Below are positions 4,463-59,232 of a stretch of DNA of 64,000 bases, one piece after another. The translations under genes and the position numbers were made by a program. The stretch lies in IMG/VR virus record IMGVR_UViG_3300020477_001008, positions 178,647-242,646 of that record; one strand, written 5' to 3'. The notes under the pieces were generated by a model. It was not told where the DNA came from. It saw nothing but the letters and a program-made list of their open reading frames with translations, and searched no databases. Within the stretch, counting starts at the first letter, position 1, and each line of letters opens with the position of its first letter.

Positions 4463-5668
4463 ATGCACAATATTCGAAAACAATTTCCCATATTTGATAA
4501 AACATTACCTAACGGTAAAAAATTAGTATATTTAGATAGTGCTAATTCTTCACAAAAACCGAAAAGGGTATTAGATAGATTATATGATTTTTATGCACAA
4601 GAATATAGTAGTGTTGGGAGAAGTATACACCAGTTAAGTACAGGTGCAAGTAAATGTTTAAATGATAGTAGAGAAGCAGTTGCAAAATTTTTAAATGCTG
4701 GTTCTGTAGATGAAATTGTTTTTACTAAAAGTGCCACAGAAGCTATTAATACGATTGCAGAAAGTTTTGGCAGAACTCAACGTGATCATTATGAAATAAT
4801 TTGTTCTGAATTAGAACATAATTCAAATTATCTTCCTTGGCATTTGCAAAGAGCTCATAAAAATGCAACAATTAAATTTATTCCTTTAAAAGATGATTAT
4901 ACATTAGATGTAGATAAGCTAGAAAGTTTAATTACTAAAAAAACTAAAATGATAGCAATAACTCATTTATCAAATGTTACTGGAGAAGTAATTAATGTTA
5001 AAAAAATATGTGAGATAGCACACAGTAAAGGAATAGCAGTTTTTGTAGATGGTACACAAGGTGCACCACATATGAAAGTTGATGTACAAGATATTGATTG
5101 TGATTTTTATTGTATTAGTGGTCATAAAATGTACGGACCTTCAGGCGTTGGGGCTTTGTACGCCAAAGAAAAATGGTTAGATGAATTATCGCCTTTTCAA
5201 GGTGGTGGTGGAACGGTACTTGATGCAACGCAAAGTGTTATTCAATATGCAGATGGACCAAAAAAATGGGAAGCTGGAACACACCCAGTTGCTGAAATTG
5301 TAGCATTAAAAGAAGCAATTGATTTTTATTATGATGTTGGATTTGATAATATGTTAAATCACGAAAAACAATTAGTTGAGTATTTGTATGAAAAATTAGC
5401 ATCTGATAATGATATTGAGTTACTATGTGGTAATAAGCCTAATGCTGTTTTATCATTTAATATTAAAGGAATACATCACGAAGATATGTCAATGTTTTTA
5501 GATGAATATGGTATTGCTACAAGACCAGGTCAACATTGTGCTATGTTATTCCATAAAAGGTACAGTTTAACTGGTTCTGTTAGAGTATCATTAGGTGTAT
5601 ATAATACCAAAGAAGAAATGGACTTTTTCTTACAGTCTTTGGGTGAAATTAAGAAGAGATTATCCTAA
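4463..5668 (+). CDS. sufS: Cysteine desulfurase, SufS type
   Basis: YLDSANSSQKP, DGTQG, SGHKMYGP (PLP Lys), EAGT, RPGQHCA (catalytic Cys). Confidence 0.93.
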   Translation: MHNIRKQFPIFDKTLPNGKKLVYLDSANSSQKPKRVLDRLYDFYAQEYSSVGRSIHQLSTGASKCLNDSREAVAKFLNAGSVDEIVFTKSATEAINTIAESFGRTQRDHYEIICSELEHNSNYLPWHLQRAHKNATIKFIPLKDDYTLDVDKLESLITKKTKMIAITHLSNVTGEVINVKKICEIAHSKGIAVFVDGTQGAPHMKVDVQDIDCDFYCISGHKMYGPSGVGALYAKEKWLDELSPFQGGGGTVLDATQSVIQYADGPKKWEAGTHPVAEIVALKEAIDFYYDVGFDNMLNHEKQLVEYLYEKLASDNDIELLCGNKPNAVLSFNIKGIHHEDMSMFLDEYGIATRPGQHCAMLFHKRYSLTGSVRVSLGVYNTKEEMDFFLQSLGEIKKRLS

Positions 5669-5673
5669 TCCTA

Positions 5674-5702
5674 TTGACTTCCTGATAAGTATTTTATATA
5701 AT
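5674..5702 (+). promoter_or_regulatory. Sigma70-type promoter
   Basis: TTGACT-N17-TATAAT upstream of rplL. Confidence 0.75.
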
Positions 5703-5739
5703 ACTGATGTACAATTAAATATAATTAATAAGGAAAACT

Positions 5740-6210
5740 ATGTCAGAAGATGAAGTAAAAAAAGCTGAAGAAACAAAGGCAGAAGAAAAGCCAGTAGAAC
5801 CAAAAGCTGAAGAAACATCTAAAACTATTACAAGAAATTTAGATGCTATTGTTGAAGAACTTGGACAATTAACAGTTATGGAAGCGGCCGATCTTGCTAA
5901 AAAATTAGCTAAAGCTTGGGATATTGATTTAGATAATATGGCGGCCGGTGTTGCACCAGCAGGTGGTGGCGCCGCGGGAGCTCCAGCAGACGCAGATGCT
6001 CCTGTAACAGTTATATTAAAAGATTTTAAAGAAGGTACTAAAATTAATGTCTTAAAAGCAATTAAGGCAATTAAAGGTTTAGGACTAATGGAATCTAAAC
6101 AATTTGTAGAAGCATTACCTAAAGAAGTTGATTCAGAAATACCAAGAGATAAAGCAGAAGAAATTAAAAAACAATTGGAAGAAGTTGGCGGTAACGTTGA
6201 AATAAAATAA
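5740..6210 (+). CDS. rplL: Ribosomal protein bL12 (L7/L12), divergent, with acidic N-terminal extension
   Basis: [20 protein letters not shown], Ala/Gly hinge, [41 protein letters not shown]. Confidence 0.9.
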
Positions 6211-7634
6211 TGTTAGATGAGCATAAGGTAGGAAAAGATTATAAAGAAGGCTTTACTACGGACATTGAAGCCTATACACTACCCCCTGGTCTAAATGAAG
6301 ACGTTATTAAAAAGATATCAAGTTTTAAAAAAGAACCACAATGGCTTTTAGACTGGAGACTAAAAGCTTATAAGGTTTGGCTGAATATGAAACAGCCTGA
6401 GTGGGCAAAGTTAGATATTAAGCCAATTGACTATCAAGCAATATCATATTATTCAACACCTAATCCTAAATTAAAATCTTTAGATGAATTAGATCCTAAA
6501 ATTTTAGAAACATATAATAAGTTAGGTATTCCATTACACGAACAAAAAGCATTAGCAGGTGTGGCCGTTGATGCAGTATTTGATTCTGTATCTGTAGCTA
6601 CAACGTACAAAGCAGATTTAGAAAAACAAGGTATACTTTTTTGTAGCTTTAGTGAAGCAGTAGAAAAATATCCAGAAATAGTTAAAAAATATTTAGGTAG
6701 TGTAGTACCACAAGGTGATAATTTTTTTGCTTGTTTAAATTCAGCTGTATTTACAGATGGTTCATTTGCTTATATTCCTAAAGGAGTTAGATGTCCTATG
6801 GAACTATCAACTTATTTTAGAATAAATGCGGCCAACACAGGACAATTTGAAAGAACATTAATTATATGTGAAGATGATGCATACGTATCTTATCTAGAAG
6901 GATGTACAGCACCAATGCGTGATGAAAATCAATTACACGCCGCGGTAGTTGAATTAGTAGCAAAAGAAAATGCAGAGATAAAATATTCAACAATACAAAA
7001 TTGGTATCCAGGAGATGAAGATGGAAAAGGTGGTGTATATAATTTTGTAACTAAACGTGGTAAATGTCAAGGACGTAAAAGTAAAATATCTTGGACACAA
7101 TTAGAAACAGGTTCAGCATTAACTTGGAAGTATCCTTCTTGTGTATTAATGGGAGATTATTCAGTAGGAGAGTTTTATTCAGTAGCAGTATCAACAGGTA
7201 AACAACAAGCTGATACAGGAACTAAAATGATACATTTAGGAAAACATACAAAATCAACAGTTATATCAAAAGGTATTTCAGCAAAACAAGGAAAGCAAAC
7301 TTATAGAGGATTAGTATCAATGGGTGGTAATGCTAAAAAATCACAAAACTATACTCAATGTGATTCGTTGCTTCTTGGAGATAAGTGTTCAGCACTTACT
7401 ATACCTTATATTAAAAGTAAAACAAAATCTTCTAAATGCGAACACGAAGCGTCAACATCAAAAGTATCTGATGAACAATTATTTTATTTAAGACAACGTG
7501 GACTTAAAGAAGAAGATGCTGTGAACTTAATTGTAAATGGTTTTGTAAAAGAAGTAACTAAACAGTTACCAATGGAGTTTGCAGTTGAGGCCAATAAACT
7601 TTTATCAGTAACATTAGAAGGATCAGTAGGATAA
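6210..7634 (+). CDS. sufB: Fe-S cluster assembly scaffold SufB
   Basis: [62 protein letters not shown]. Confidence 0.97.
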
Positions 7635-7855
7635 TGATAGATAAATTAGATTTAAGAACGTTGCAAAAAGAATCAGCAAGAGCATTAATAGTAATGCAAA
7701 ATGCTGACAATTTATCTTTATCTGAAATAAATCAAAAAGTTAGTCACGACTCAACTATATTTTATAAAAAAGTTTTAGAAAAATATGTAGAACTGTTTGG
7801 TGACTTACCAAGTAAAACAACAGAAGGACAAAAAATAAATTTAATAATGGAGTAG
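7634..7855 (+). CDS. Hypothetical protein
   Basis: Translationally coupled 73 aa ORF. Confidence 0.65.
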   Translation: MIDKLDLRTLQKESARALIVMQNADNLSLSEINQKVSHDSTIFYKKVLEKYVELFGDLPSKTTEGQKINLIME

Positions 7856-7859
7856 TTTT

Positions 7860-11506: not shown

Positions 11507-11521
11507 AGACTTGATTAAGGG

Positions 11522-11541
11522 TAGGGTGTTTAGGCACCCTA
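11522..11541 (+). terminator. GC-rich hairpin between hsp20 and dnaK
   Basis: TAGGGTG-TTTAGG-CACCCTA; no U-tract, so it may be a stabiliser or processing site. Confidence 0.35.
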
Positions 11542-11599
11542 TCTAAAAGGTCGTAAATTAAAAAAACGTGCTTATATATAAAGGCGTAAAGGAGAAAAG

Positions 11600-15313: not shown

Positions 15314-15838
15314 ATGGATATAATCACAGGACATATAGCAGTTATAATCAGTATAGCAATTTTAATTAGTTTTGTTATATTAGCAATCGTTAAAAGACCT
15401 AAAGTAAAACTTTTTGTTAAGATTGCATCTACTACAATGGCAGTTGGAACTGTTATTGCTTTATATTTTGCTTTAGAAACTATGTATGGATGGCCTTGGA
15501 AAACCACTTTCCCAACTGGAAAATATACATATATCAGTCATACCGTTAGTGCAGATGAAGAGGAAATTTACATATGGCTAATTGATAGGAATAAAACTAG
15601 TGACTATGCTTTTTGGCAAAAATGGTTAATTAATGATAGACAACCAAGGAACATTAGTGTATTATATGATGATATGTTACACGAACAGCTACAAAAAATT
15701 CAAGAAATGGCGGCTGGACAACCATATCCGGTTGAACTAAAATCTATGAAATTAAAAGATGTAAAAGAAGGTGAAATAAATCGTTCGGATGAAACTTTAA
15801 ATTATATCTTACCAGATGTCAACATACAGGCAAAATAA
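15314..15838 (+). CDS. Two-TM membrane protein, third gene of the Mot/Exb-like triad
   Basis: Two N-terminal hydrophobic helices, then GWPW and a soluble domain; tightly coupled. Confidence 0.6.
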   Translation: MDIITGHIAVIISIAILISFVILAIVKRPKVKLFVKIASTTMAVGTVIALYFALETMYGWPWKTTFPTGKYTYISHTVSADEEEIYIWLIDRNKTSDYAFWQKWLINDRQPRNISVLYDDMLHEQLQKIQEMAAGQPYPVELKSMKLKDVKEGEINRSDETLNYILPDVNIQAK

Positions 15839-16140
15839 TGACTGAAGAAAAATCAAATCAGCAAGTACAAACAGATGTAGAAATAAAAGAACCAAGTAGA
15901 TATAATGTTCTGTTTATGAATGATGATTATACACCAATTGATTTTGTTCAACAATTATTAACAGATATATTTTATCATAAGCCTGATGATGCATCAGAAT
16001 TAGCAAAATTAATTCACGAAAAAGGTAAAGCAATTGTAGGAACATATACATATGAGGTTGCTGAACAAAAATCAATAGAATCAACAACGATGGCTAGATC
16101 CGCTGGACATCCTTTACAAGTAACAATAGAACAAGAATAA
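15838..16140 (+). CDS. clpS: N-end-rule adaptor ClpS
   Basis: YNVLFMNDDYTPIDFV, IHEKGKAIVGTYTYEVAEQK, HPLQVTIE. Confidence 0.92.
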   Translation: MTEEKSNQQVQTDVEIKEPSRYNVLFMNDDYTPIDFVQQLLTDIFYHKPDDASELAKLIHEKGKAIVGTYTYEVAEQKSIESTTMARSAGHPLQVTIEQE

Positions 16141-17165: not shown

Positions 17166-17726
17166 ATGTTTATACAAACTGAAGCAACACCAAACCCAAA
17201 TGCTTTAATTTTTCAACCAGGTTGTGAAATTATGGGATCAAAGCCTTATAAATCTTATAACAGAAATAATCCTGTTGATGATTCACCATTAGCAGAAATT
17301 TTGTTTAATATTGATGGTATTGAAGATATAATGTTTGGAAAAGACTTTATAACAATAAGCAAAAAAGCTTCAATAGAGTGGGCAGTTTTAAAAGCACCAA
17401 TATTGCATAGTTTAAATGATTACTTGAGCAATAATAATCCAGTTGTAATAAATGATAATCCATCTCCGGCTTGTGAAGATATTAATGAAGATGATAATGA
17501 TGAAGTTATAGAACGAATTAAACAATTATTAGAAACAAAAGTTAGACCAGCAGTTGCAAAAGACGGTGGAGATATTATATTTCACAAATATGAAAAAGGA
17601 GTTGTCTATCTTGAAATGTTTGGTGCTTGTTCTGGTTGCCCAAGTTCAGAGTATACTTTAAAAATGGGTATTGAAAGTATGTTGAAACATTATATACCAG
17701 AAGTAAAAAGGGTTGATGCAATATGA
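17166..17726 (+). CDS. Nfu/NifU-like Fe-S carrier (alphaproteobacterial type)
   Basis: MFIQTEATPNPNALIF, SPLAEILF, VRPAVAKDGGDI, GACSGCPSS, GIESMLKHYIPEV. Confidence 0.9.
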   Translation: MFIQTEATPNPNALIFQPGCEIMGSKPYKSYNRNNPVDDSPLAEILFNIDGIEDIMFGKDFITISKKASIEWAVLKAPILHSLNDYLSNNNPVVINDNPSPACEDINEDDNDEVIERIKQLLETKVRPAVAKDGGDIIFHKYEKGVVYLEMFGACSGCPSSEYTLKMGIESMLKHYIPEVKRVDAI

Positions 17727-18028
17727 GTGATAAAGTAAAAGAAGAAATTATTAAAAATTTAAGAACAGTATTTGATCCAGAAATTTCTATTAACATTTAT
17801 GACCTTGGATTAATTTATAATATTGATATGAGTGAGTTACCTAAAGTAACAATTACTCATACATTAACATCAGTATTTTGCCCAGCCGCGGATCAAATTA
17901 TTGAAGATATCCAAATGGCAACTGAATCAGTAGCAGAAGTGGACCAATGTATGATTATTACTACATTTGATCCACCTTTTGGTCCAGAAATGATGAGTGA
18001 AGAAGCAAGATTAATATTAAACATTTGA
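17723..18028 (+). CDS. SufT / DUF59 Fe-S maturation protein
   Basis: LRTVFDPEISINIYDLGLIY, TLTSVFCP, FDPPF..EMMSEEARL. Confidence 0.85.
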   Translation: MSDKVKEEIIKNLRTVFDPEISINIYDLGLIYNIDMSELPKVTITHTLTSVFCPAADQIIEDIQMATESVAEVDQCMIITTFDPPFGPEMMSEEARLILNI

Positions 18029-20168: not shown

Positions 20169-21245
20169 ATGTATACAATAGAACAAATAAAAACAATACA
20201 CTTAGAAATTACCCAAAAGTGTCAAGCCGCTTGTCCAATGTGCGACAGAAATCAAAATGGCGGAGACCTTAATCCACATATAAAATTAGACGAATTAACA
20301 TTACAAGACTGTAAACAAATTTTTACACCTTCATTTATATCACAATTAAAGAAAATGTATATGTGTGGTAATTTAGGTGATCCTGTAATTGCTACTGATA
20401 CTTTAGAAGTATTTGAATACTTTAGACAACACAATCCAAACATATGGTTGAATATGCATACAAACGGTGGTGCTAAAAAACCTGAGTGGTGGAAAGATTT
20501 AGCAAAAGTTATTGGCAAAAATGGAGACGTTACTTTTAGTGTTGATGGGTTAGAAGATACAAATCATTTATACAGGCAAAATGTTAATTGGAAACTTGTA
20601 GACCAATCAATGAAAGCATATATTGAAGGTGGTGGAAAAGTTAGATGGGATTATTTAATATTTGATCACAATCAACATCAAGTAGAAGAAGCAGAACAAT
20701 ATGCCAAGTCAATTGGTGTACATAAATTTCAAGCAAAGAAAACAGGTAGATTTATTACTACTACAAGTCAAGCTAAACAATCACACCAAGCAGTAAATCG
20801 TAAAGGTAAAGAAACTCAAGAATTAAAAAAGCCAGATGATAAGTTTGTAAACAAAGCTCTTAAAAAACAAGACTCTTTACTTGACAAATATGGTTCTATG
20901 GATGCATACTACGATAAAGTACCAATTTGGTGCAAAGTAAAAGATGAAGGTAGTTTATATATTAGTGCAGAAGGACTAGCATTACCTTGTTGTTGGACAG
21001 CAGGTAGAATGTACAAATGGTGGCATAAAGATCCTAAAGTAGAACAAATATGGAATCATATAGATGAAGTAGGTGGAAAACAAATGCTTGATGCTAAAAA
21101 CGGATTAGATAAAGTTTTTAATACTGGAATATTTGATTCAATTGAAAAGAGTTGGAATATTGATGGCTGTAATAACGGCAAATTAAAAGTATGTTCTATG
21201 AAATGTGGTAAAGAATTTGATCCATTTGCAGAACAGTTTAACTAA
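20169..21245 (+). CDS. Radical SAM protein, class B (core + C-terminal Cys module)
   Basis: CQAACPMC, GNLGDP, HTNGG, FSVDGLEDTNHLYR; C-terminal C...PCC...CSMKC. Confidence 0.9.
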   Translation: MYTIEQIKTIHLEITQKCQAACPMCDRNQNGGDLNPHIKLDELTLQDCKQIFTPSFISQLKKMYMCGNLGDPVIATDTLEVFEYFRQHNPNIWLNMHTNGGAKKPEWWKDLAKVIGKNGDVTFSVDGLEDTNHLYRQNVNWKLVDQSMKAYIEGGGKVRWDYLIFDHNQHQVEEAEQYAKSIGVHKFQAKKTGRFITTTSQAKQSHQAVNRKGKETQELKKPDDKFVNKALKKQDSLLDKYGSMDAYYDKVPIWCKVKDEGSLYISAEGLALPCCWTAGRMYKWWHKDPKVEQIWNHIDEVGGKQMLDAKNGLDKVFNTGIFDSIEKSWNIDGCNNGKLKVCSMKCGKEFDPFAEQFN

Positions 21246-21272
21246 TTAAATTACCAATAAATATAGTAAAAG

Positions 21273-22745
21273 ATGACTGATAAACCTAAACTACCATCGA
21301 AAACGTTTTGTGCTTTACCTTGGATGCACTTGTCAACAAGGCCTGACGGAAATATGCGAGTATGTTGTACAGCAAACGCAAGTTCTGTTGGTGCTACAAA
21401 TGATAAGGAATTTGGAGGACAAGTGGGACTATTACGTAATGAAGATGGTGTACCGGCAAATTTAAACAATGCAGATTTAATGTCTAGTTGGAATAACAGT
21501 TATATGAAAAATGTGCGTAAGCAGATGTTAACTGGAAAAAGACCACCAAGTTGTATTAAATGTTATAAAGAAGAAGATGCAGGACATATGAGTAAGCGTC
21601 AATGGGAAACTGAATATTGGTTAAACAGATATTCAATGGATGAAATAATTGGCGAAACAACTGAAGATGGTGCTATTCCACCTAAGATTAGATATATTGA
21701 TTTACGTATGGGATCTAAATGTAATTTAAAATGTATTATGTGTAGTCCACACGATAGTTCATTGTGGGTAAAAGACTGGCAGGCTGTTTATCCTAAAATT
21801 AAAAATCCTATATTAAAAGAATCAATGAGCTGGCAGAATAAAGGAAAAGTTCACGGAGCAAATTACAATTGGCATAAAGACAATCCTACATTCTGGGATC
21901 AATTATATGAGCAAATACCTCATATGTATCAGTTATATTTTGCTGGAGGCGAATCTACTATTATTGAAGAGCATTATACTTTATTAGAAGAAGTAATTAG
22001 ACGTGGATATGCTCACAAGATAGAATTACGATACAACTCAAATGGTGTCGAAATGCCTGATAGATTATTTGAGATTTGGAGCAAATTTAAGAGAGTAAGA
22101 TTTCATTATAGTGTTGACTCTATAGAAGAGATGAATAGTTATATACGTTTTCCAGCAGACTGGGATAATACAGTTAAGCAGTTTCATCTATTAGATAATA
22201 CAGATGATAAAGTTGAAGTTACAATTGCCTGTGCAGTACAGGCCTTGAATATACATTATATTCCTGACTTTATAAAATGGAAGCTTGAACAGAATTTTAA
22301 AAAGATTAATGTATGGCCATTTGGTGCTGGAATGATTAATTATCATTTTGTATATTGGCCACCTCAATTAAATGTAAAAGTATTACCACAATGGTTTAAA
22401 GAAAGAGTTAAACAGAAGTACGAGGAGTTTTATCCTTGGCTAGAAGAAAATTGGAAATTAAGTGGTGCTCCAAGTAAAGAAGCATTTTTAAACGCAGACT
22501 ACGGTATCAAAAGATTAAAAGGAATGGTTAAATTTATGATGTCAGAAGATTGGTCTGTGAGAATGCCAGAGTTTAGAGAGTACATAACACAATTTGATAT
22601 ACAGAGAAACACAGACTTTAAAAAAGTATTTCCTGATATGGCAGGCCTTTTAGATGAAACACTTGACAATAGTATTGAGACCAAACTAGGTGATAAAGTG
22701 GATGAAAAAACTGAAAAGGAACTTGCAGATGGCGGAACGATCTAA
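21273..22745 (+). CDS. Radical SAM protein, class A (N-terminal twitch-like module)
   Basis: CALPW...CC...CIKC, then DLRMGSKCNLKCIMC, AGGES, SVDS; ATAAATA 9 nt upstream. Confidence 0.92.
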   Translation: MTDKPKLPSKTFCALPWMHLSTRPDGNMRVCCTANASSVGATNDKEFGGQVGLLRNEDGVPANLNNADLMSSWNNSYMKNVRKQMLTGKRPPSCIKCYKEEDAGHMSKRQWETEYWLNRYSMDEIIGETTEDGAIPPKIRYIDLRMGSKCNLKCIMCSPHDSSLWVKDWQAVYPKIKNPILKESMSWQNKGKVHGANYNWHKDNPTFWDQLYEQIPHMYQLYFAGGESTIIEEHYTLLEEVIRRGYAHKIELRYNSNGVEMPDRLFEIWSKFKRVRFHYSVDSIEEMNSYIRFPADWDNTVKQFHLLDNTDDKVEVTIACAVQALNIHYIPDFIKWKLEQNFKKINVWPFGAGMINYHFVYWPPQLNVKVLPQWFKERVKQKYEEFYPWLEENWKLSGAPSKEAFLNADYGIKRLKGMVKFMMSEDWSVRMPEFREYITQFDIQRNTDFKKVFPDMAGLLDETLDNSIETKLGDKVDEKTEKELADGGTI

Positions 22746-24003
22746 AACATACTGTCCTTTACCTTTTATTCATTCACACGCAGGGTTAAATGGAAAATAT
22801 AAACCTTGTTGTAATTCAGATACATCAGTTCACGGTTACAAATATCATATAGAAAAATTAGGTTATAAAGATTGGTTTTATCATCCAGAAATGGATAAAC
22901 TAAGAAATGATTTATTAAATGGTGTACAAAATCCAATGTGTGATGTTTGTTGGAAACAAGAAGCATTTAGTTCAGATAGTTATAGAACAGTTTATATAAA
23001 AAAATATCAAGATGATAATATAAATCATAAAGATCCAAAAATAACTTATATTGATATGAAGCTATCAAATGAATGTAATTTAGCTTGTACTCATTGTGAT
23101 TATTCTAACTCATCACAAATTTATAAAGATATGTTATCTATAGAAGAGCAAGGTTTGGAGTTACCACCTCAATGGGAAAGAAGTCCTAATTTTGAAAAAA
23201 GATTAGAAGATAAAGATAGAAAAGATATGTATCATAAGCAACCACAAAACGTTGTTGATGAATTAATTGATTTAATGCCAGACCTTAAACACTTAAAAGT
23301 TACAGGTGGAGAGCCTACTATTACAAAAGAATTTTTTAGATTAGTAGATTATGCAGTTGAAAATAACTATGCAAAAAATCTTAATTTGTATATTACTACT
23401 AATGGAACAAGGTTTACTCCTGACTTTATAAAAAAATTACAACACTTTAAAAATTTACATTTAACAGTTAGTTGTGATGGATATGGAGATACTTACGAAT
23501 ATATTAGATATCCATTTACTTGGAAAATGTTTGAGAAAAGATTAAAAGTTGTTGCAGAACATTTAAAGTCAACTAATCATAATATTAGATCATTAAATTT
23601 TAACTGTGTAGCTCAGATGCAAAACATTGAAAACATACCAAAACTTGAAAATTGGATTTATGATTTATTTCAGCAACAAGCATCTCTTTATGTACAGCCA
23701 CATATTAATCCTGTTGATAGTACAAATCATTCTAAACTATTACCAAAGCATATTTTAGAAAAAGCACTAGAAGATATAAGAATATCAAATGCAAAATCAG
23801 GATATGATTTAAAAATGTATACAGATATGTTAGAATGGTTAATTAAAAACTTTAATAGTGATGAATTAAAAATATATAGATCAGTCAAATATCTAAAAAA
23901 TATGAAAAATGCACTTGTTAATCTTGACAAGATAAGAAAACAAGACTATAGAACTAATCTTGAACCATTAACAAGAGAATGGGTGGAGGGTTTAAATGTC
24001 TAA
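22729..24003 (+). CDS. Radical SAM protein, class A
   Basis: CPLPF...PCC...CDVC; CNLACTHC; TGGEP; SCDG; start set at MAERSK. Confidence 0.9.
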   Translation: MAERSKTYCPLPFIHSHAGLNGKYKPCCNSDTSVHGYKYHIEKLGYKDWFYHPEMDKLRNDLLNGVQNPMCDVCWKQEAFSSDSYRTVYIKKYQDDNINHKDPKITYIDMKLSNECNLACTHCDYSNSSQIYKDMLSIEEQGLELPPQWERSPNFEKRLEDKDRKDMYHKQPQNVVDELIDLMPDLKHLKVTGGEPTITKEFFRLVDYAVENNYAKNLNLYITTNGTRFTPDFIKKLQHFKNLHLTVSCDGYGDTYEYIRYPFTWKMFEKRLKVVAEHLKSTNHNIRSLNFNCVAQMQNIENIPKLENWIYDLFQQQASLYVQPHINPVDSTNHSKLLPKHILEKALEDIRISNAKSGYDLKMYTDMLEWLIKNFNSDELKIYRSVKYLKNMKNALVNLDKIRKQDYRTNLEPLTREWVEGLNV

Positions 24004-25246
24004 AACATTTAAGTTTTGTAAGGCACCATTTGGTAGTATATATGTAAGACCAAATGTAAGACCAAATCCACAAGCTGGTAAACAAACTGAGATTAGCTTC
24101 TGCTGTGTGCAGACTGAAAAATATATGTTAAAAGAAAATGAAACAGTTAATGATTTTTGGAAAAGCGACTGGGCAAAAGAACATAGGCAACAGTTTCTTA
24201 ATAAAGAGTGGCCTTCTTCTTGTAGTTATTGTGAATGGAAAGAAAATAACAATATTGAAAGCGATATTGGAACACACCAACAGATTACTATTAAAGAGTA
24301 TAATATTTCTGATGGCAATGAAATGGCTAAACCAAAATATGTTGATTATAGACCAGATAATTTATGCAACCTAATGTGTACAATGTGTGGTCCTAGTAAT
24401 AGTAATTTAATTGAAGATATGTGGCGTGAAATACCTATTAGTCCTGGGTGGCACCACGAAGCAAATGCAGGAATAGATGGTGATGTAACTATTGAAGAAG
24501 AAGAATTAGTAACCAAAGAATTACTTGGTAATCATACAATGCAATTAAAAGTTTTAGGTGGAGAACCTACTATTAATAAAAAAGTTCATTCAGTATTTCA
24601 ATATGCGATTGATAAAGGATATGCACAAAATATAGATTTAAAAATAACAACCAATTTTACTAATGTAAACAAAACTTATGATATGTTTGATAAGTTTAAG
24701 TCTTGCAGGATACAAGCTAGTATTGATGCAACAGGACCAACATATGATTATATTAGAAGACCAGCTAAATGGTCAGCTGTAAAAGAAAAGCTTTTACAAT
24801 TTGCTGATAGATACGAAAATTCTTATCCAAAAATGCAATGGAATTTTAATATTGTTTGGCAATTAGCAAATTGCTTTACTGTTAAAGATTGGTTACCTGA
24901 ATTACTTGATATGTTCTACAATGATCCAAAGCTAAAAAAAATAGCAAAACAAGACGTAGGATTATCATTAATTAATTGTGATGGAACAGGTATAACACTA
25001 GACGCTATACCAGATAGTATGAAACATTATATAATTGATGATTTAGAAGATTTATTAAAAGATTGGAAACATAATCCTTTCGCATTTAAAGATATTGAAA
25101 CATTAATCAAGTATACTGAAAATGCAAAGTTTACCAATTTGCAACATAGAGCATTTAAAAGAAAATTTACATTAATGGATCAATATAAAAAAACAAATAT
25201 GTTTGAATTAAGTCCAAGGTTTAAGGAGTTGTATGACTTTAGATAA
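23996..25246 (+). CDS. Radical SAM protein, class A
   Basis: CKAPF...FCC...CSYC; DNLCNLMCTMC; LGGEP; SIDA. Confidence 0.9.
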   Translation: MSKTFKFCKAPFGSIYVRPNVRPNPQAGKQTEISFCCVQTEKYMLKENETVNDFWKSDWAKEHRQQFLNKEWPSSCSYCEWKENNNIESDIGTHQQITIKEYNISDGNEMAKPKYVDYRPDNLCNLMCTMCGPSNSNLIEDMWREIPISPGWHHEANAGIDGDVTIEEEELVTKELLGNHTMQLKVLGGEPTINKKVHSVFQYAIDKGYAQNIDLKITTNFTNVNKTYDMFDKFKSCRIQASIDATGPTYDYIRRPAKWSAVKEKLLQFADRYENSYPKMQWNFNIVWQLANCFTVKDWLPELLDMFYNDPKLKKIAKQDVGLSLINCDGTGITLDAIPDSMKHYIIDDLEDLLKDWKHNPFAFKDIETLIKYTENAKFTNLQHRAFKRKFTLMDQYKKTNMFELSPRFKELYDFR

Positions 25247-26153
25247 AAAATTGTTTTTAACAAAACACGCCGCTATCTATGATCCTGAATTTCAAGATAG
25301 ATTGTGGAATGCACCTTGGCAAGATTGGTTAAGTAAATCAGGTTATTTTAATGTTAAAGATGAATATATAGAAACTATTGATAAATGGATTTATAATTCT
25401 AATGAAATTAAATTTAATGGGTTAGACAGATTTAAGTATAAAGATTTAATTCACGGAACAACTCAAGCTTTTGATGAAGCATATTACAGATATAAAGAAC
25501 GTAGGTTACGAACTTATAGAGGAGAGTATGCTTATCATAAAAGAGTGCAAGGAGTAAAGAATTTTATTGATACTAAAGAAGGTGATTATATACCAATTGA
25601 AGAAAATGATTGGGTAGTAATAAGTTTACCATTTTGTGGTAATGGTGCTGAGCCACCATTTTTAGAAAAAGTTTTAAATGATTGTGCAAATTTAAATGTA
25701 CCAGTATTAATTGATTGTGCTTGGTTTGGAACACACTATTGGAAAAAAACATTTACTTTAGATAATCCTTGTATTAAAGAAGTATGTTTTAGTATTTCAA
25801 AAGGAATAGGAATGGGTAATATGAGAACTGGTATTCGATATTCTAATTACGATGATCATTTACCTATTAGACAACATAATAATTATAACCATTTGCCTTT
25901 AGGATTATCACAAATTGGTATATGGCAAATGCAAAAGTTTAGTTCTGATTTTATTGGTAACAAGTATAATGAAATGGTAAAAACAGTTTGCGAACAAAAT
26001 AATATTATAATGACTCCAGTTATGCATATTGGGTTACTTGAAAAAGGACATCCTGATTATGAATATTTTTTAACTGATGATGTTTATAGTAAAGTTGGAA
26101 TACGTGAAGCTGTAAAAAAGTATAGAAAGGAATTGCGAAATGAAGAAAGATAA
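25233..26153 (+). CDS. PLP-dependent (aminotransferase fold I-like) protein inside the radical SAM array
   Basis: VISLPF..G, VLIDCAWFG, FSISKG (PLP Lys), RTGIR. Confidence 0.6.
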   Translation: MTLDKKLFLTKHAAIYDPEFQDRLWNAPWQDWLSKSGYFNVKDEYIETIDKWIYNSNEIKFNGLDRFKYKDLIHGTTQAFDEAYYRYKERRLRTYRGEYAYHKRVQGVKNFIDTKEGDYIPIEENDWVVISLPFCGNGAEPPFLEKVLNDCANLNVPVLIDCAWFGTHYWKKTFTLDNPCIKEVCFSISKGIGMGNMRTGIRYSNYDDHLPIRQHNNYNHLPLGLSQIGIWQMQKFSSDFIGNKYNEMVKTVCEQNNIIMTPVMHIGLLEKGHPDYEYFLTDDVYSKVGIREAVKKYRKELRNEER

Positions 26154-37003: not shown

Positions 37004-37078
37004 GGTCCCTTCGTCTATCGGTTAGGACAGCGGTTTTTCATACCGCAAAGAGGAGTTCGATTCTCCTAGGGACTACCA
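37004..37078 (+). tRNA. tRNA-Glu (TTC)
   Basis: GGTCCCT/AGGGACT, GCGGT TT TTC AT ACCGC, TTCGATT, CCA. Confidence 0.96.
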
Positions 37079-40238: not shown

Positions 40239-41408
40239 ATGGAAATTAATCTTAAAGACAATAAAACCTTTTGTGCTTTTGGCTTTAAAGGAGCAATGAT
40301 TGAAGTTGATGGCAGAGTAAGGCCGTGCTGTCGTTTTAAGATTAAAAAATCACAAAGATTAAAAGTAAATGAAGATAGATCTATTACTGATATTTTTAAT
40401 TCAGAACTTTATAAAGATATAAGAAAAAAAATGTTAGCTGGCGAAAAAGTAGATGGTTGCCAGAGATGTTATAGAGAAGAAGAAGCAGGATATCTTAGTA
40501 TGCGTTTATCTGATATTATCCAATCAACTAATACTGATGTAGAGTTACAATATCTTGAGTTTGAATCAGGAAGACATTGTAATTTAAAATGTAGAAGTTG
40601 CTCAGCTGATGTGTCAACTAAATGGAATGAAGATATAAAAAGACTTCCATCATTACAAGATCCAGATTTTGATTATGAAGCACATTATTATAATGAAGCA
40701 TTAGAAAAATTATCTAAAGATGAGTGTTCTAAATTAAGGTCTATAAAAGTTACAGGTGGTGAGCCATTTTTAAGTAAAACATTTTTAACTTTTATGAATA
40801 ATATGGTTGAATGGGATTATGCAAAAAATGTAACTTTGAAAGTTTATACAAATACTTCTTTTTTACCAAAAAAAAAGTTTCTTGATCAATTATTAAAATT
40901 TCGAAATTTATATTTGTATATGAGTATTGATGATATTAAAGAAAGAAATGATTATTTAAGATCAGGTAGTGAGTGGAAACTAGTAGAACTTGTAGCTCGT
41001 TATTGGATGGAGTTAGCATCAAAAGAGAAAAAAGTACATTTAGTTGTTAGTAATACAGTGAGTATTTTTAATCTGTTAACTTTAAATGAATTTGATGAAT
41101 GGCTAAAACAAAAAGAAAAAGAATATAATATTTTTATAGAATGCAATTATCAGCCTTTGCATTATCCAACAGAATTAGCATACTACAATTGGCCAAGACA
41201 TATTAAAAATCAAATGAAAGAATCTTTAGCTAGATACAAAAACCCATCTAATAAAATTAAAAGGCTTTATGATTTATTAGATTCACATAAGGTGACTACA
41301 ATTAGTGTTAAAAAGCAATTCTTATCCACTACAAATAGTATCGATTATGTTAGAAATGAGAGTTGGAAACAAGTATTTCCTGAACTTTTCAAGCTATTAA
41401 ATGGTTGA
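40239..41408 (+). CDS. Radical SAM protein, class A (13th copy, outside main array)
   Basis: CAFGF...PCC...CQRC; GRHCNLKCRSC; TGGEP; SIDD; GTAAATA-N8-ATG. Confidence 0.9.
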   Translation: MEINLKDNKTFCAFGFKGAMIEVDGRVRPCCRFKIKKSQRLKVNEDRSITDIFNSELYKDIRKKMLAGEKVDGCQRCYREEEAGYLSMRLSDIIQSTNTDVELQYLEFESGRHCNLKCRSCSADVSTKWNEDIKRLPSLQDPDFDYEAHYYNEALEKLSKDECSKLRSIKVTGGEPFLSKTFLTFMNNMVEWDYAKNVTLKVYTNTSFLPKKKFLDQLLKFRNLYLYMSIDDIKERNDYLRSGSEWKLVELVARYWMELASKEKKVHLVVSNTVSIFNLLTLNEFDEWLKQKEKEYNIFIECNYQPLHYPTELAYYNWPRHIKNQMKESLARYKNPSNKIKRLYDLLDSHKVTTISVKKQFLSTTNSIDYVRNESWKQVFPELFKLLNG

Positions 41409-53951: not shown

Positions 53952-53974
53952 AATAAACACTAAATACAGCTATT

Positions 53975-54475: not shown

Positions 54476-54487
54476 GTAAATATTACT

Positions 54488-56500: not shown

Positions 56501-56503
56501 GCT

Positions 56504-57142
56504 ATGGACCTTGAATATCTAAAAAAATTAGCAGGGATAGGTGAGCAGAATCAAATGAAAAGTTTGGCTCAAGAAATGGCCGAACGTAGAAGAGACATTA
56601 TGAAAAATGTAATGAAAGAACAAAAAGAAGAACAATTGGAATTACAAGCACTTCCTTACAAAATTACAGATTTAGCACCAGTACTATCAAAAGAAAATGT
56701 TGATTATCATTATGATATATTAAGTAGAGGATACGTAAACAGATATAATAATAATGAAGGCGATTCAGACTTTAATTATGGTGGTGCAAAACTACACAAT
56801 TTATGGTGGCAACAATTTAAACCAGCAAAAGAAACATCAAATTACAGCGGTCCTATAAAGCAAACTATAGATGCTAATTATGGTGATTTAAAAGGTTTAG
56901 AAGAAAAATTAGTTGAAGCCGCAATGACTATACAAGGATCAGGATGGGTTTATCTAACTAAAACTGGAACAATTAAAACAACACCAAATCAAAGTTACAA
57001 ACCAGATGTGTTTATGCCTATAGATATGTGGGAACACAGCTTCACGGACTATGTACCAGCCAAAGACGCAAAGGTTAAATACATTAAAGCAGTTCTTAAA
57101 TTAATAGATTGGAATGCGATTAATAGAAGGTTAGAAGGATGA
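56504..57142 (+). CDS. sod: Fe/Mn superoxide dismutase with N-terminal extension
   Basis: LPY...YHY, LHNLWW, QGSGW, PNQ, DMWEH: all four metal ligands present; Gly-Gly and NQ suggest Mn-type. Confidence 0.9.
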   Translation: MDLEYLKKLAGIGEQNQMKSLAQEMAERRRDIMKNVMKEQKEEQLELQALPYKITDLAPVLSKENVDYHYDILSRGYVNRYNNNEGDSDFNYGGAKLHNLWWQQFKPAKETSNYSGPIKQTIDANYGDLKGLEEKLVEAAMTIQGSGWVYLTKTGTIKTTPNQSYKPDVFMPIDMWEHSFTDYVPAKDAKVKYIKAVLKLIDWNAINRRLEG

Positions 57143-57957: not shown

Positions 57958-57958
57958 T

Positions 57959-58210: not shown

Positions 58211-58239
58211 CAAAGCAGAGATAGGTGAGCGGAATTATT

Positions 58240-58725
58240 ATGAAAAACAATATAAGAAAATGGAAACAATTAATTGAAAGCTGTGGTGAAATAAACCACA
58301 CTGATTCTGGCGAACACGACCACGAAGCTTCAATGGCACGTGGACAATTATATCATATAGCCAAAGATGCAATTAACTTAATCAAATTTATTGAAAAAGG
58401 TGAAAACCTAGAAGGTTGGGTTGCATCTAAAATTACTAAAGCAAAAGAAAATATATCAGTAGTTGCAGACTATATTGAGTCAGAAAAAACTGTTAACAAT
58501 AACGATTCACCTGAAGAATATACAAAAGTACCTGAAGAAATGCCTACAGAAGAAGATAGCAAATATACAAGTATGAACAAATACGGTATCTATACTACAA
58601 AAAGTAAAGATGGTGATTTTCAAGTTTGGCAACACGACAAACATTTAGGCTCTTTTAAAACTATTCAAGATGTAGATAAGTTCTTAACTACACATCTAAA
58701 CAAAGAATCCGTTGACAATCAATAA
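58240..58725 (+). CDS. Putative head protein
   Basis: KQLIE leader; DHEASMARGQL...LEGWVASKITKA module; CTAAATA at 58203. Confidence 0.6.
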   Translation: MKNNIRKWKQLIESCGEINHTDSGEHDHEASMARGQLYHIAKDAINLIKFIEKGENLEGWVASKITKAKENISVVADYIESEKTVNNNDSPEEYTKVPEEMPTEEDSKYTSMNKYGIYTTKSKDGDFQVWQHDKHLGSFKTIQDVDKFLTTHLNKESVDNQ

Positions 58726-58740
58726 TTAATATTGTATTCT
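58712..58740 (+). promoter_or_regulatory. Sigma70-type promoter for tRNA-Thr/Asn and fdx
   Basis: TTGACA-N17-TATTCT. Confidence 0.65.
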
Positions 58741-58750
58741 ATTAACTTAT

Positions 58751-58826
58751 GCCGCTTTAGCTCAGTTGGTAGAGCAACTGATTTGTAATCAGTAGGTCCG
58801 CGGTTCGAGTCCGTGAAGCGGCACCA
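58751..58826 (+). tRNA. tRNA-Thr (TGT)
   Basis: GCCGCTT/AAGCGGC, ACTGA TT TGT AA TCAGT, CCA. Confidence 0.97.
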
Positions 58827-58837
58827 GGCTACCACAT

Positions 58838-58913
58838 TCCTCGGTAGCTCAGTTGGTAGAGCAGTTGACTGTTAATCAATTGGTCGCAGGTTCGAGTCCT
58901 GCCCGAGGAGCCA
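58838..58913 (+). tRNA. tRNA-Asn (GTT)
   Basis: TCCTCGG/CCGAGGA, GTTGA CT GTT AA TCAAT, CCA. Confidence 0.97.
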
Positions 58914-58926
58914 AAAAGGATTAACA

Positions 58927-59232
58927 ATGACACTGACTATTAATGTTATAGATAGAGACGGAAATAATCATAAAATTGAAACATTTGAAGGCCAATCTAT
59001 AGCTCAAGCAATTGTTCAACATATAAAACCAAGTGAATTTATGATATGTGGAGGTTGTTGTGCTTGTGGTACGTGTGCTGTTGATATTGATAAAAAAGGC
59101 GAACTACCTGAAATGGATGTTGATGAAGATGCATTATTAGATACAGTAGATGATAGAAATCCTAATAGTAGATTAAGTTGCCAAGTACCAATGACTAAAG
59201 AGCTTGATGGAGTTACAGTAAAGATAATATGA
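58927..59232 (+). CDS. fdx: [2Fe-2S] ferredoxin, adrenodoxin/Fdx type
   Basis: CGGCCACGTC...EDALLD...SRLSCQ. Confidence 0.9.
   Translation: MTLTINVIDRDGNNHKIETFEGQSIAQAIVQHIKPSEFMICGGCCACGTCAVDIDKKGELPEMDVDEDALLDTVDDRNPNSRLSCQVPMTKELDGVTVKII

What the first reader, a model, noticed from the sequence alone, without database searches (positions are those of the whole stretch)
4463..59232. Phage-encoded Fe-S assembly and electron-supply chain alongside its radical SAM array
Seen: SufS (sulfur donor), SufB (scaffold), adjacent Nfu and SufT (carriers/maturation), Fpr directly after the radical SAM array, a [2Fe-2S] ferredoxin and SOD. Known: radical SAM enzymes need a [4Fe-4S] cluster plus a one-electron donor (ferredoxin/flavodoxin with Fpr and NADPH); Nfu and SufT assist under high cluster demand; superoxide destroys [4Fe-4S] clusters. 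Inference: 13 enzymes, each probably with two clusters, create an Fe-S burden that the virus meets with its own build-deliver-reduce-protect pipeline. This is the leading candidate for an undescribed viral system.
Basis: partly seen in the sequence, partly recalled or inferred. Interest (0 to 1): 0.88.

Follow-up and report, generated by a model that had tools for sequence, protein, structure and literature searches.

The report
Huge marine phage's own Fe-S machinery
A very large ocean phage carries a complete but scattered set of genes for building, delivering and reducing iron-sulfur clusters, together with at least 18 radical SAM enzymes that need such clusters; related phages keep the same genes side by side, but the basic idea was already proposed in 2017.

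Summary
Observation: confirmed. SufS, SufB, Nfu, SufT, Fpr, a [2Fe-2S] ferredoxin and an Fe/Mn-type SOD are all at the stated coordinates, with catalytic or ligand residues intact. Thirteen ORFs in the window carry the CX3CX2C radical SAM motif.

New evidence from outside the window: the same phage genome (at least 311 kb, Tara Oceans) also encodes SufE, a 7Fe ferredoxin FdxA, SufC, a truncated SufD, an A-type carrier and five more radical SAM enzymes. The SUF pathway is therefore complete but dispersed.

In other IMG/VR viral contigs these genes form tight clusters:
- SOD-sufB-C-D-S-T-carrier.
- Fpr-sufBCD.
- Radical SAM followed directly by Fpr.
- A radical SAM gene embedded between sufS and sufT.

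Most viral SufB sequences form one clade apart from the 80 best cellular hits. In a scan seeded with Fpr alone, radical SAM was by far the commonest neighbour (22 of 56 groups).

Interpretation: partly supported. The functional link rests on gene neighbourhood only. The related contigs are phylogenetically non-independent. Most radical SAM arrays have no Fe-S gene within 10 kb. Nishimura et al. 2017 had already proposed that phage Fe-S assembly genes serve phage radical SAM enzymes.

Verdict: a new, much more complete variant of a known kind of viral auxiliary gene set.

The parts
4463..5668 (+). SufS, type II cysteine desulfurase (sulfur donor)
   Evidence: Pfam Aminotran_5 E 3e-123. TIGR01979 sufS 466.9 bits, cutoff 475.1. 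Solved SufS/CsdB relatives reach 380 bits, and the PLP-Lys and active-site Cys motifs align.
6210..7634 (+). SufB, Fe-S scaffold subunit
   Evidence: NF008773 856.5 bits, above the 717 cutoff. E. coli SufB 5awf 627 bits, with C254, C405 and E434 equivalents conserved. It sits in a mostly viral SufB clade.
17166..17726 (+). Nfu-type carrier (Nfu_N + NifU C-terminal domain with CxxC)
   Evidence: Pfam Nfu_N E 2e-24 and NifU E 4e-27. CSGC motif seen in the translation.
17723..18028 (+). SufT-like DUF59 maturation factor; its start overlaps the nfu stop by 4 bp
   Evidence: Pfam FeS_assembly_P E 1.6e-13. TIGR02945 SUF_assoc 104.6 bits, below the 143.4 cutoff. Homologs sit directly after sufS in viral suf operons.
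20169..36973 (+). Array of 13 consecutive ORFs: 12 radical SAM enzymes with CX3CX2C (9 of them N-terminal-twitch type) and one ORF without the motif (25233-26153)
   Evidence: Pfam Radical_SAM/SPASM hits. NF033640 N_Twi_rSAM 277-430 bits, cutoff 170. Cysteine motif count.
37004..37078 (+). tRNA-Glu in the gap between the array and fpr
   Evidence: ARAGORN and Rfam.
37097..37864 (+). Fpr, bacterial subclass I ferredoxin-NADP+ reductase
   Evidence: Pfam FAD_binding_6 + NAD_binding_1. 268 bits to 6rr3 and 247 bits to A. vinelandii 1a8p, with FAD and NADP motifs aligned. Homologs follow radical SAM genes or flank sufB in other viral contigs.
40239..41408 (+). Further N-terminal-twitch radical SAM enzyme, 2.4 kb downstream of fpr
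   Evidence: SPASM + Radical_SAM. NF033640 292 bits. CX3CX2C at residue 114.
56504..57142 (+). Divergent Fe/Mn-type superoxide dismutase, cytoplasmic
   Evidence: Sod_Fe_N + Sod_Fe_C. The four metal ligands align to 1ues. No signal peptide. Homologs sit directly upstream of sufB in other viral contigs.
58927..59232 (+). Adrenodoxin/ISC-type [2Fe-2S] ferredoxin
   Evidence: Pfam Fer2 28 bits, above the 21 cutoff. Weak fdx_isc hit. CX5CX2C...C pattern in the translation.
15838..16140 (+). ClpS adaptor. This is context: together with ClpX (1615-2907), ClpP (18060-18647), Hsp20 (11063-11506) and DnaK (11600-13492) it forms the proteostasis genes interleaved with the suf genes
   Evidence: Pfam. 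Hsp20-ClpS lies directly upstream of sufB in 18 of 73 viral SufB groups.

Best explanation
The window is the last 64 kb of a 242.6-kb IMG/VR contig from a tailed marine phage whose genome is at least 311 kb.

The phage encodes a complete SUF-type Fe-S cluster pathway, spread over several places in the genome:
- SufS plus SufE mobilise sulfur from cysteine.
- SufB, SufC and a truncated SufD form the ATP-dependent scaffold.
- An A-type carrier, Nfu and SufT hand finished clusters to apo-proteins.

It also encodes a subclass I ferredoxin-NADP+ reductase, two ferredoxins (7Fe FdxA and a [2Fe-2S] Fdx) and an Fe/Mn-type SOD.

The most likely role is to raise Fe-S supply during infection of an iron-poor, oxic-water host, above all for the phage's own cluster-hungry enzymes. 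These are at least 18 radical SAM proteins (most with two clusters), a Cas4-like nuclease and the ferredoxins themselves. NADPH -> Fpr -> ferredoxin then supplies the single electrons needed both for cluster assembly and for reductive SAM cleavage.

Shown here: gene identities, intact key residues, completeness of the set, and recurrent neighbourhood in other viral contigs.
Inferred: every biochemical step, the client specificity and the timing.
For: Identity and residues.

Same genome, outside the window:
- SufE, CtaG and FdxA lie about 5 kb upstream.
- SufC (TIGR01978 244.9 bits, above the 212.8 cutoff) and a 198-aa SufD that keeps the C358/H360 equivalents sit next to two radical SAM genes, about 90 kb upstream.
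- An A-type carrier (TIGR00049 98 bits, above 58.8) and two more N-twitch radical SAM genes lie just past the window end.

Phage identity:
- IMG/VR membership.
- PAAR, virion structural, tail-fibre and phage exonuclease PHROG hits.
- 7 tRNAs, all genes on one strand, and about half the ORFs without a family.

Neighbourhood conservation:
- SOD-sufB-C-D-S-T-ATC is contiguous in L089 and L095.
- Fpr-sufB-C-D in L085.
- Radical SAM-Fpr...sufB in L236/L237.
- sufB..C-D..3 radical SAM genes in L090.
- A 10-gene radical SAM array followed by Fpr-HAD-ligase in L228.
- A radical SAM gene between sufS and sufT in L044.

Counts:
- 11 of 90 dereplicated viral SUF groups carry an N-twitch-like radical SAM gene in their flanks, against 0 of 80 cellular sufB loci.
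- In the Fpr-seeded scan, radical SAM is the top co-occurring family (22 of 56 groups; the next family is in 4).
- All 8 long groups with Fpr at least 64% identical to the window's have 2-9 radical SAM genes within 10 kb.
- 63 of 70 viral SufB sequences plus the window form one supported clade apart from the 80 best cellular hits.

Precedent for the logic: PMC5332604. SufT and Nfu are needed under high Fe-S demand: PMC4982691 (listed).
Against: - There is no expression or biochemical data.
- In this genome the genes are dispersed and interleaved with Clp, chaperone, ribosomal, porin and transporter genes. A general host-support island explains the layout equally well.
- Only 15 of the 80 loci found with a radical SAM query (14 besides the window's own locus) show any Fe-S or redox gene within 10 kb.
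- 79 of 90 viral SUF groups show no radical SAM gene in their flanks.
- The contigs that do show the association are related large phages, so the independent events are fewer than the counts suggest.
- In a genome this rich in radical SAM genes, lying within 10 kb of one is not rare by chance.
- SufD is truncated, so its competence is unknown.
- SufT, SufE, SOD, Fdx and Fpr all score below the cutoffs of the best-matching NCBIfam models.
- The promoter and terminator scans gave nothing above shuffled sequence.
Confidence: 0.55

Rival explanations
1. General host maintenance. The Fe-S, redox and SOD genes are auxiliary metabolic genes that keep the host's own Fe-S dependent metabolism running (respiration, amino-acid and cofactor synthesis) under iron scarcity and oxidative stress during a long infection by a huge phage. 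They would be part of a broad takeover island of chaperones, proteases and translation factors, with no special tie to the phage radical SAM enzymes.
For: - The suf genes in the window are interleaved with ClpX, IF3, bS21, bL12, Hsp20, DnaK, ClpS, ClpP, a porin and SbmA.
- Hsp20-ClpS sits directly upstream of sufB in 18 of 73 viral SufB groups.
- Most viral SUF loci have no radical SAM gene nearby.
- The literature reads viral Fe-S genes as stress-response boosters (PMC8940887).
Against: - A radical SAM gene is embedded inside a viral suf operon.
- sufC-sufD of this genome lies next to two radical SAM genes.
- Fpr directly follows radical SAM genes in several groups, and radical SAM is its top neighbour.
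- The two explanations are not exclusive.
Confidence: 0.3
2. No functional coupling. A very large genome has accumulated many host-like genes independently. The Fe-S genes and the radical SAM genes merely coexist, and their proximity in some contigs reflects shared ancestry and the high density of radical SAM genes.
For: - The genes are dispersed over at least 158 kb in this genome.
- The related contigs are phylogenetically non-independent.
- Radical SAM clusters occupy several places in the genome, so random proximity within 10 kb is likely.
Against: - The same families recur in at least six different orders in contigs whose SufB is only 62-70% identical.
- Complete contiguous suf operons with SOD and carrier genes are conserved.
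- Key residues are intact in every component, and identical SufB protein is found on at least 24 contigs from different samples. Both indicate purifying selection.
Confidence: 0.1
3. The sulfur and electron genes serve something other than Fe-S client maturation. For example, SufS/SufE could supply sulfur for thio-modification of tRNA or DNA, and Fpr/ferredoxin could drive a desaturase, oxygenases or nucleotide metabolism.
For: - The genome carries a fatty-acid desaturase.
- It has several 2OG/Asp-Arg hydroxylase-like oxygenases.
- It has 7-deazaguanine pathway genes: PTPS and GTP cyclohydrolase I.
- It has 7 tRNAs in the window.
- Cysteine desulfurases are known sulfur donors for many pathways (established knowledge).
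Against: SufS is accompanied by the whole scaffold (SufB, SufC, SufD) and by three kinds of cluster carrier, which have no role outside Fe-S assembly. In relatives sufS is inside sufBCDS operons.
Confidence: 0.05

Closest known systems
E. coli-type SUF pathway (sufABCDSE) with SufT and Nfu accessory factors
   Same: - Type II SufS with SufE.
- SufB with the conserved sulfur-acceptor and ligand residues.
- SufC ATPase above the equivalog cutoff.
- An A-type carrier.
- Nfu and a DUF59 SufT, as in bacteria under high Fe-S demand (PMC4982691).
   Different: - It is encoded by a virus.
- The genes are scattered instead of forming one operon in this genome.
- SufD is cut down to its C-terminal 198 residues. 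Short forms of 144-228 aa are common in viral loci and absent from 64 cellular loci.
- SufB lacks the N-terminal Cys-rich insert of E. coli SufB.
- Viral SufB forms its own clade.
Fe-S related auxiliary gene sets of ocean phages (Nishimura et al. 2017, mSphere, PMC5332604; earlier virome reports of sufA and iscU)
   Same: A marine phage genome combines Fe-S carrier genes, a DUF59/PaaD protein and a dozen radical SAM genes. The authors proposed that viral assembly proteins serve virally encoded Fe-S proteins.
   Different: - Those genomes carry only carriers or scaffolds of the ATC/IscU type.
- Here the whole SUF core (SufS, SufE, SufB, SufC, SufD) is present, plus Nfu, Fpr, two ferredoxins and SOD.
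- This genome is at least 311 kb against 183 kb.
- No paper describing a complete viral SUF set was found.
Flavodoxin or ferredoxin / Fpr / NADPH reducing system for radical SAM enzymes, and the A. vinelandii FPR-FdI pair
   Same: The Fpr is a close relative of subclass I bacterial FPRs (1a8p, 6rr3). The genome also encodes FdxA, the 7Fe ferredoxin type that partners such FPRs (the partnership is established knowledge).
   Different: - No flavodoxin was seen.
- The coupling to radical SAM enzymes is inferred from gene adjacency only.
- No bona fide isolated phage in GenBank carries such an Fpr.
SOD-like genes of PA5oct-type Pseudomonas jumbo phages
   Same: Fe/Mn SOD homologs encoded by very large phages, about 30% identical.
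   Different: - The window protein has a shortened N-terminal hairpin and a 45-residue extension.
- In relatives it sits directly upstream of sufB, a context not reported for PA5oct-type phages.
Microcystis phage MaAM05 sufBCDS-iscU
   Same: It is the only GenBank phage record with a plausible sufB, 64% identical and followed by sufC, sufD, sufS and iscU.
   Different: There the operon sits at the end of the record among host-like panB, panC and pxpA genes. It is a standard cellular-type operon with full-length sufD, so it may be host-derived DNA.

Membership tests
SUF Fe-S cluster assembly system | SufB scaffold subunit with the conserved sulfur-acceptor Cys and cluster-ligand Cys/Glu | tested here: met
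   NF008773 856.5 bits, above 717. Alignment to 5awf keeps the C254, C405 and E434 equivalents.
SUF Fe-S cluster assembly system | SufC ABC-type ATPase partner | tested here: met
   Not in the window. It is on the same contig at about 89-90 kb (L332:4992-5690). TIGR01978 244.9 bits, above 212.8.
SUF Fe-S cluster assembly system | SufD paralog completing a SufBC2D scaffold | tested here: inconclusive
   Only a 198-aa C-terminal SufD (L332:5659-6255), scoring 134.5 bits on TIGR01981, below 222. It keeps the C358/H360 equivalents. Whether it forms a working scaffold is unknown.
SUF Fe-S cluster assembly system | Type II cysteine desulfurase SufS with PLP lysine and catalytic cysteine, plus the sulfur acceptor SufE with its cysteine | tested here: met
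   SufS. SufE: L318:8163-8567, Pfam SufE, with the Cys51 equivalent conserved; 68 bits, below the 160 cutoff.
SUF Fe-S cluster assembly system | Genes organised as one suf operon | tested here: not met
   In this genome sufCD, sufE, sufS-(bL12)-sufB, nfu-sufT and the carrier lie at five separate places spanning at least 158 kb. Related viral contigs do have contiguous operons.
SUF Fe-S cluster assembly system | Cluster assembly and transfer activity | not testable with these tools
   Needs biochemistry or genetics.
Bacterial subclass I ferredoxin-NADP+ reductase (Fpr) | Two-domain FAD/NAD(P) fold with the FAD-binding RxYS motif, the NADP-binding GTGxAP motif and the subclass I C-terminus | tested here: met
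   Pfam domains. Full-length alignment to 6rr3 at 268 bits, with the motifs aligned. The only NCBIfam Fpr model is the E. coli subclass II type and scores 121 bits, below 390.
N-terminal twitch radical SAM family (NF033640) | Model score above the cutoff, CX3CX2C motif and an N-terminal Cys-rich twitch domain | tested here: met
   Three window members score 277-430 bits and three off-window members 223-302 bits, against a cutoff of 170. CX3CX2C is in 13 of 14 ORFs and the N-terminal Cys pattern in 10. Three array members have the motif near the N-terminus instead and are a different architecture.
Fe/Mn superoxide dismutase | His, His, Asp, His metal ligands in a two-domain fold | tested here: inconclusive
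   The ligands align and both Pfam domains hit. However, the N-terminal hairpin is shortened, second-sphere His residues are replaced, and scores are far below the equivalog cutoffs (57 bits against 348).
Viral Fe-S auxiliary gene sets (Nishimura 2017 type) | A phage genome that combines Fe-S assembly or carrier genes with many radical SAM genes | tested here: met
   Phage hallmarks. A-type carrier, DUF59 and at least 18 radical SAM genes. Comparison with PMC5332604.

The most novel reading that the evidence does not exclude
A lineage of huge marine phages owns a self-sufficient Fe-S economy. It consists of a virus-specific SufB clade with SufC and a miniaturised SufD scaffold, SufS/SufE, three carrier types, an NADPH-Fpr-ferredoxin chain and an SOD. 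It evolved together with, and is dedicated to, large arrays of two-cluster radical SAM enzymes. If so, the virus builds and powers a whole cofactor-dependent enzyme factory independently of host Fe-S capacity.
Probability: 0.35. Interest if true: 0.8.

Novelty: new variant of a known kind. Interest (0 to 1): 0.66.

Why it matters
Viral Fe-S genes have so far been reported as single carriers or scaffolds. They have been read as boosters of host stress responses.

A complete virus-encoded SUF pathway with its own reductase, ferredoxins and SOD would be different in kind. Its genes are conserved as operons in many ocean phage contigs and repeatedly placed beside radical SAM genes. That would be one of the fullest cofactor-biogenesis systems known in a virus.

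It would bear on three questions:
- How huge phages cope with iron scarcity in the surface ocean.
- What the widespread, uncharacterised N-terminal-twitch radical SAM arrays of phages make.
- How small a SUF scaffold can be, given the truncated SufD.

It also gives a practical route to active phage radical SAM enzymes: co-express them with their own maturation and reduction partners.

Tried and rejected
- **Megablast to GenBank phages.** The 20-kb core gave only a 40-bp match, so there is no close sequenced relative.
- **PHROG scan of window ORFs without a family.** It gave almost nothing. Phage hallmarks had to be found by walking outside the window.
- **First SufC motif search.** My regular expression demanded LSGG and wrongly showed no SufC anywhere. 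Reading the ORFs showed ASGGEKKK-type SufC, and I redid the search.
- **First SufC alignment scan.** A narrower lineage alignment found it.
- **Ten-member radical SAM alignment.** It was too divergent to scan with, so four closer members were used.
- **Single-protein Fpr scan.** It found only two relatives. An alignment scan was needed.
- **Distant Fpr loci (44-50% identity).** They have adenylate-cyclase-like neighbours and look like cellular-type fragments inside IMG/VR. I gave them little weight.
- **Microcystis phage MaAM05 sufBCDS.** It lies in a host-like context at the end of the record and is doubtful as a viral operon.
- **Other GenBank 'phage' hits for SufB, Fpr and Nfu.** They are prophage flanks or mislabelled bacterial contigs.
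- **Promoter and terminator scans.** Counts equalled those of shuffled sequence.
- **Host inference.** The best cellular SufB hits are only 68-72% identical and spread over many Proteobacteria and other phyla.
- **Sharon et al. 2011.** The paper is not held in the library.
- **Mis-binned cellular DNA or a giant eukaryotic virus.** Considered and rejected on the PAAR, tail fibre and virion protein hits, the bacterial-type translation genes and the one-strand gene layout.

Full report
**What the window is.** All ORFs of note lie on the + strand, and G+C is about 30%. The window is identical to the last 64 kb (178647-242646) of IMG/VR contig IMGVR_UViG_3300020477_001008. That contig is 242,646 bp and comes from a Tara Oceans sample. 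The same sequence is also part of a 311,421-bp ENA assembly contig. No sequenced phage is close at the DNA level.

Several lines of evidence point to a tailed phage:
- IMG/VR membership.
- Seven scattered tRNA genes.
- About half the ORFs have no Pfam family.
- Just outside the window there are a PAAR protein (PHROG 281), virion structural protein hits, a phage-type exonuclease, a strong hit to PHROG 455 and a tail-fibre-like protein.

**Checking the observation.**
- SufS (4463-5668) is a type II cysteine desulfurase. It scores 466.9 bits on the SufS family model and 380 bits to a solved SufS-type enzyme, with the PLP lysine and catalytic cysteine motifs present.
- SufB (6210-7634) passes the SufB equivalog cutoff (856.5 against 717). 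It keeps the residues equivalent to E. coli C254, C405 and E434.
- Nfu (17166-17726) has Nfu_N and NifU domains with the CxxC motif.
- SufT (17723-18028) is a single DUF59 domain whose start overlaps the nfu stop.
- Fpr (37097-37864) aligns end to end with bacterial subclass I ferredoxin-NADP+ reductases, at 268 bits to 6rr3 and 247 bits to the A. vinelandii enzyme.
- The SOD (56504-57142) is divergent but keeps all four metal ligands. Its 45-residue N-terminal extension is charged and helical, not a signal peptide, so the protein is cytoplasmic.
- The ferredoxin (58927-59232) has the adrenodoxin/ISC-type cysteine pattern.

The radical SAM array runs from 20169 to 36973 as 13 consecutive ORFs.
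- Twelve carry CX3CX2C; the ORF at 25233-26153 does not.
- A further radical SAM gene lies at 40239-41408, so the window has 13 motif-bearing enzymes.
- Ten of these have the N-terminal cysteine-rich twitch domain. The three window members that were scanned pass the NCBIfam model NF033640. Two clusters per enzyme is therefore reasonable.
- Fpr begins 124 bp after the last array gene, with tRNA-Glu in the gap.

**The rest of the pathway is in the same genome.** They do.
- A scan of IMG/VR with an alignment of SufC proteins from the nearest relatives hit this same contig at about 84-95 kb, on the other strand.
- The gene order there is: radical SAM-SPASM, unknown, B12-type radical SAM, unknown, SufC, a 198-residue SufD, then a 2OG oxygenase.
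- SufC scores 244.9 bits, above the 212.8 equivalog cutoff.
- The short SufD is the C-terminal part only, but it keeps the equivalents of E. coli SufD C358 and H360.

Walking upstream of the window found three more genes. SufE has its active cysteine conserved. A Cox11/CtaG-like protein follows it. FdxA is a 7Fe ferredoxin scoring 145 bits against a cutoff of 135. FdxA is the ferredoxin type that partners subclass I FPRs in A. vinelandii; that partnership is established knowledge and was not tested here.

Walking downstream found an A-type carrier (98 bits against a cutoff of 58.8) and two more N-twitch radical SAM genes. A further N-twitch gene sits between the ribonucleotide reductase genes and the PAAR gene.

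In about 127 kb read, the genome therefore has the following:
- SufS, SufE, SufB, SufC and a short SufD.
- An A-type carrier, Nfu and SufT.
- Fpr, FdxA and a [2Fe-2S] Fdx.
- An SOD.
- At least 18 radical SAM enzymes.
- A Cas4-like nuclease; Cas4 nucleases are known Fe-S proteins, but its cluster cysteines were not checked here.

The set is complete but dispersed over at least 158 kb.

**Related sequences.**
- SufB relatives occur on 73 IMG/VR loci with low G+C.
- Local searches showed two layouts. Thirty-two loci have contiguous sufB-sufC-sufD-sufS-sufT. The rest, including the window's lineage, have sufB without sufC nearby.
- In 18 of 73 dereplicated viral SufB groups, Hsp20 and ClpS lie directly upstream of sufB.
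- The best cellular SufB hits among 185,579 species genomes are only 68-72% identical and taxonomically scattered.
- In a FastTree of 152 sequences, 63 of 70 viral SufB plus the window form one supported set (SH-like support 95) that excludes all 80 cellular sequences. The cellular sample is only the best 80 hits, so this shows a distinct viral lineage, not its origin.

**Does the Fe-S set go with radical SAM genes?**

For:
- The families recur side by side in different orders in divergent contigs: SOD-sufB-C-D-S-T-carrier (L089, L095), Fpr-sufB-C-D (L085), radical SAM-Fpr with sufB 9 kb away (L236/L237), sufB..sufC-sufD..three radical SAM genes (L090, a 328-kb contig from the same sample), and a 10-gene array followed by Fpr-HAD-ligase as in the window (L228).
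- In L044 an N-twitch-type radical SAM gene (CNLRCRMC) sits between sufS and sufT, with abutting or overlapping ORFs.
- After dereplication, 11 of 90 viral SUF groups have such a radical SAM gene in their flanks, against 0 of 80 cellular sufB loci.
- The least biased test was a scan seeded only with an Fpr alignment. It gave 295 relatives, and the best 80 collapse to 56 groups. Radical SAM was the commonest of all window families in their flanks (22 groups; the next family is in 4).
- All eight long groups with Fpr at least 64% identical to the window's have 2-9 radical SAM genes within 10 kb. In four groups Fpr directly follows a radical SAM gene on the same strand.

Against:
- N-twitch radical SAM arrays are very common in viral contigs. 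More than 531 relatives were confirmed, and 76 of the best 80 loci have 2-12 copies. Only 15 of those 80 loci (14 besides the window's own locus) show any Fe-S or redox gene within 10 kb.
- Flanks of 5-10 kb cannot see the rest of each genome.
- The positive contigs are related phages, so the events are not independent.
- In a genome with several radical SAM clusters, proximity within 10 kb is not rare by chance.
- The more distant Fpr loci (44-50% identity) have adenylate-cyclase-like neighbours and probably are cellular-type fragments.

**Most likely mechanism.**
1. SufS and SufE pass persulfide sulfur to SufB.
2. SufB with SufC and the short SufD assembles clusters, using ATP and reducing equivalents.
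3. The A-type carrier, Nfu and SufT deliver [4Fe-4S] clusters to apo-proteins.
4. NADPH, Fpr and FdxA or Fdx provide single electrons. These could serve assembly (reduction of persulfide and ferric iron, as ferredoxin does in the ISC system), the reduction of radical SAM clusters, or both.
5. SOD limits superoxide damage to exposed clusters.

The identities, the intact residues and the neighbourhoods are shown. Each chemical step and the choice of clients are inferred. I put 0.55 on the version in which the phage's own radical SAM enzymes are the main clients. I put 0.30 on general host maintenance; the two can both be true.

**Comparison with what is known.**
- Viral Fe-S genes such as sufA, iscU, sufE and nifU are established auxiliary metabolic genes.
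- Nishimura et al. 2017 described a 183-kb T4-like ocean phage genome with an A-type carrier, PaaD/DUF59, glutaredoxin, Cas4 and 12 radical SAM genes. They proposed that viral assembly proteins serve viral Fe-S proteins.
- What I could not find in the library is any description of a complete viral SUF core, a viral Fpr/FdxA chain or truncated viral SufD.
- In GenBank phage records, sufB occurs only in Microcystis phage MaAM05, in a host-like context at the end of the record, and in prophage flanks.
- Fpr and Nfu hits in GenBank phage records are mislabelled or fragmentary.
- SOD-like genes do occur in PA5oct-type jumbo phages.

**Verdict.** The finding is a new and much more complete variant of a known kind of viral auxiliary gene set, and it is worth experimental follow-up. 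Interest: 0.66.

Noticed in passing
L332:5659-6255 (same contig, about 89 kb); also L019:11398-11991, L044:12107-12688, L069:8730-9314: Truncated SufD is a viral trait in this data set. Many viral SufD ORFs are 144-228 aa and consist of the C-terminal part only. All 64 cellular SufD next to sufB are at least 401 aa. The short form keeps the C358/H360 equivalents.
   Followed up: partly
window 20169-36973; loci L155-L234: Arrays of N-terminal-twitch radical SAM genes (NF033640) are widespread in IMG/VR. More than 531 relatives were confirmed, and 76 of the best 80 loci have 2-12 copies within 10 kb. Their substrate and product are unknown.
   Followed up: partly
window 9223-9813; L332:7497-8327 (- strand); L366:1905-2633: Asp/Arg beta-hydroxylase-like oxygenase genes accompany radical SAM arrays in 15 of 80 viral loci, and the genome has at least three copies. 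This hints that the arrays modify a peptide or protein.
   Followed up: no
window 2904-3807 and 5740-6210: Translation genes are present in the phage: IF3, ribosomal protein bS21 and bL12. The bL12 gene lies between sufS and sufB, an order also kept in the relative L008.
   Followed up: no
window 1615-2907, 11063-13492, 15838-16140, 18060-18647; L319:1-411: There is a full proteostasis set: ClpX, ClpS, two ClpP, Hsp20, DnaK and a Cpn10-like gene downstream. Hsp20-ClpS sits directly upstream of sufB in 18 of 73 viral SufB groups. A plant preprint reports that Clp protease controls SUFB levels (10.1101/2024.11.01.621566, listed), so a regulatory tie is conceivable.
   Followed up: partly
window 25233-26153: This member of the radical SAM array has no CX3CX2C motif and no Pfam hit. 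It is nevertheless conserved at 59% identity in the related array of L228. It may be a non-catalytic partner or the substrate-binding component.
   Followed up: no
window 14098-15838: A MotA/TolQ/ExbB-like membrane protein is followed by two membrane ORFs without a family. The first pair recurs near suf genes in L019, L036, L038 and L069. A link to TonB-type iron uptake is only a guess.
   Followed up: no
L318:7799-10004 (5-7 kb upstream of the window): AdoMet decarboxylase, SufE, a Cox11/CtaG-like copper chaperone and FdxA lie together, making a small metal-cofactor corner of the genome.
   Followed up: no
L366:6852-7604; L154:15925-18602; L318:12887-13351: The genome has other unusual metabolic genes: a fatty-acid desaturase (a possible further client of Fpr/ferredoxin), GTP cyclohydrolase I, an IMPDH-like gene, PRPP synthetase and PTPS/QueD. 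These suggest a 7-deazaguanine pathway.
   Followed up: no
window 9962-10891 and 16140-17108: A Gram-negative porin-like gene and a strongly matching SbmA/BacA transporter gene (453 bits) are carried by the phage. SbmA is 86-87% identical in relatives L009 and L019.
   Followed up: no
loci L376-L443: Many IMG/VR 'viral' contigs carrying Fpr at 44-50% identity have conserved neighbours such as an adenylate-cyclase-domain protein. They look like cellular fragments, so co-occurrence counts from IMG/VR need this caveat.
   Followed up: partly
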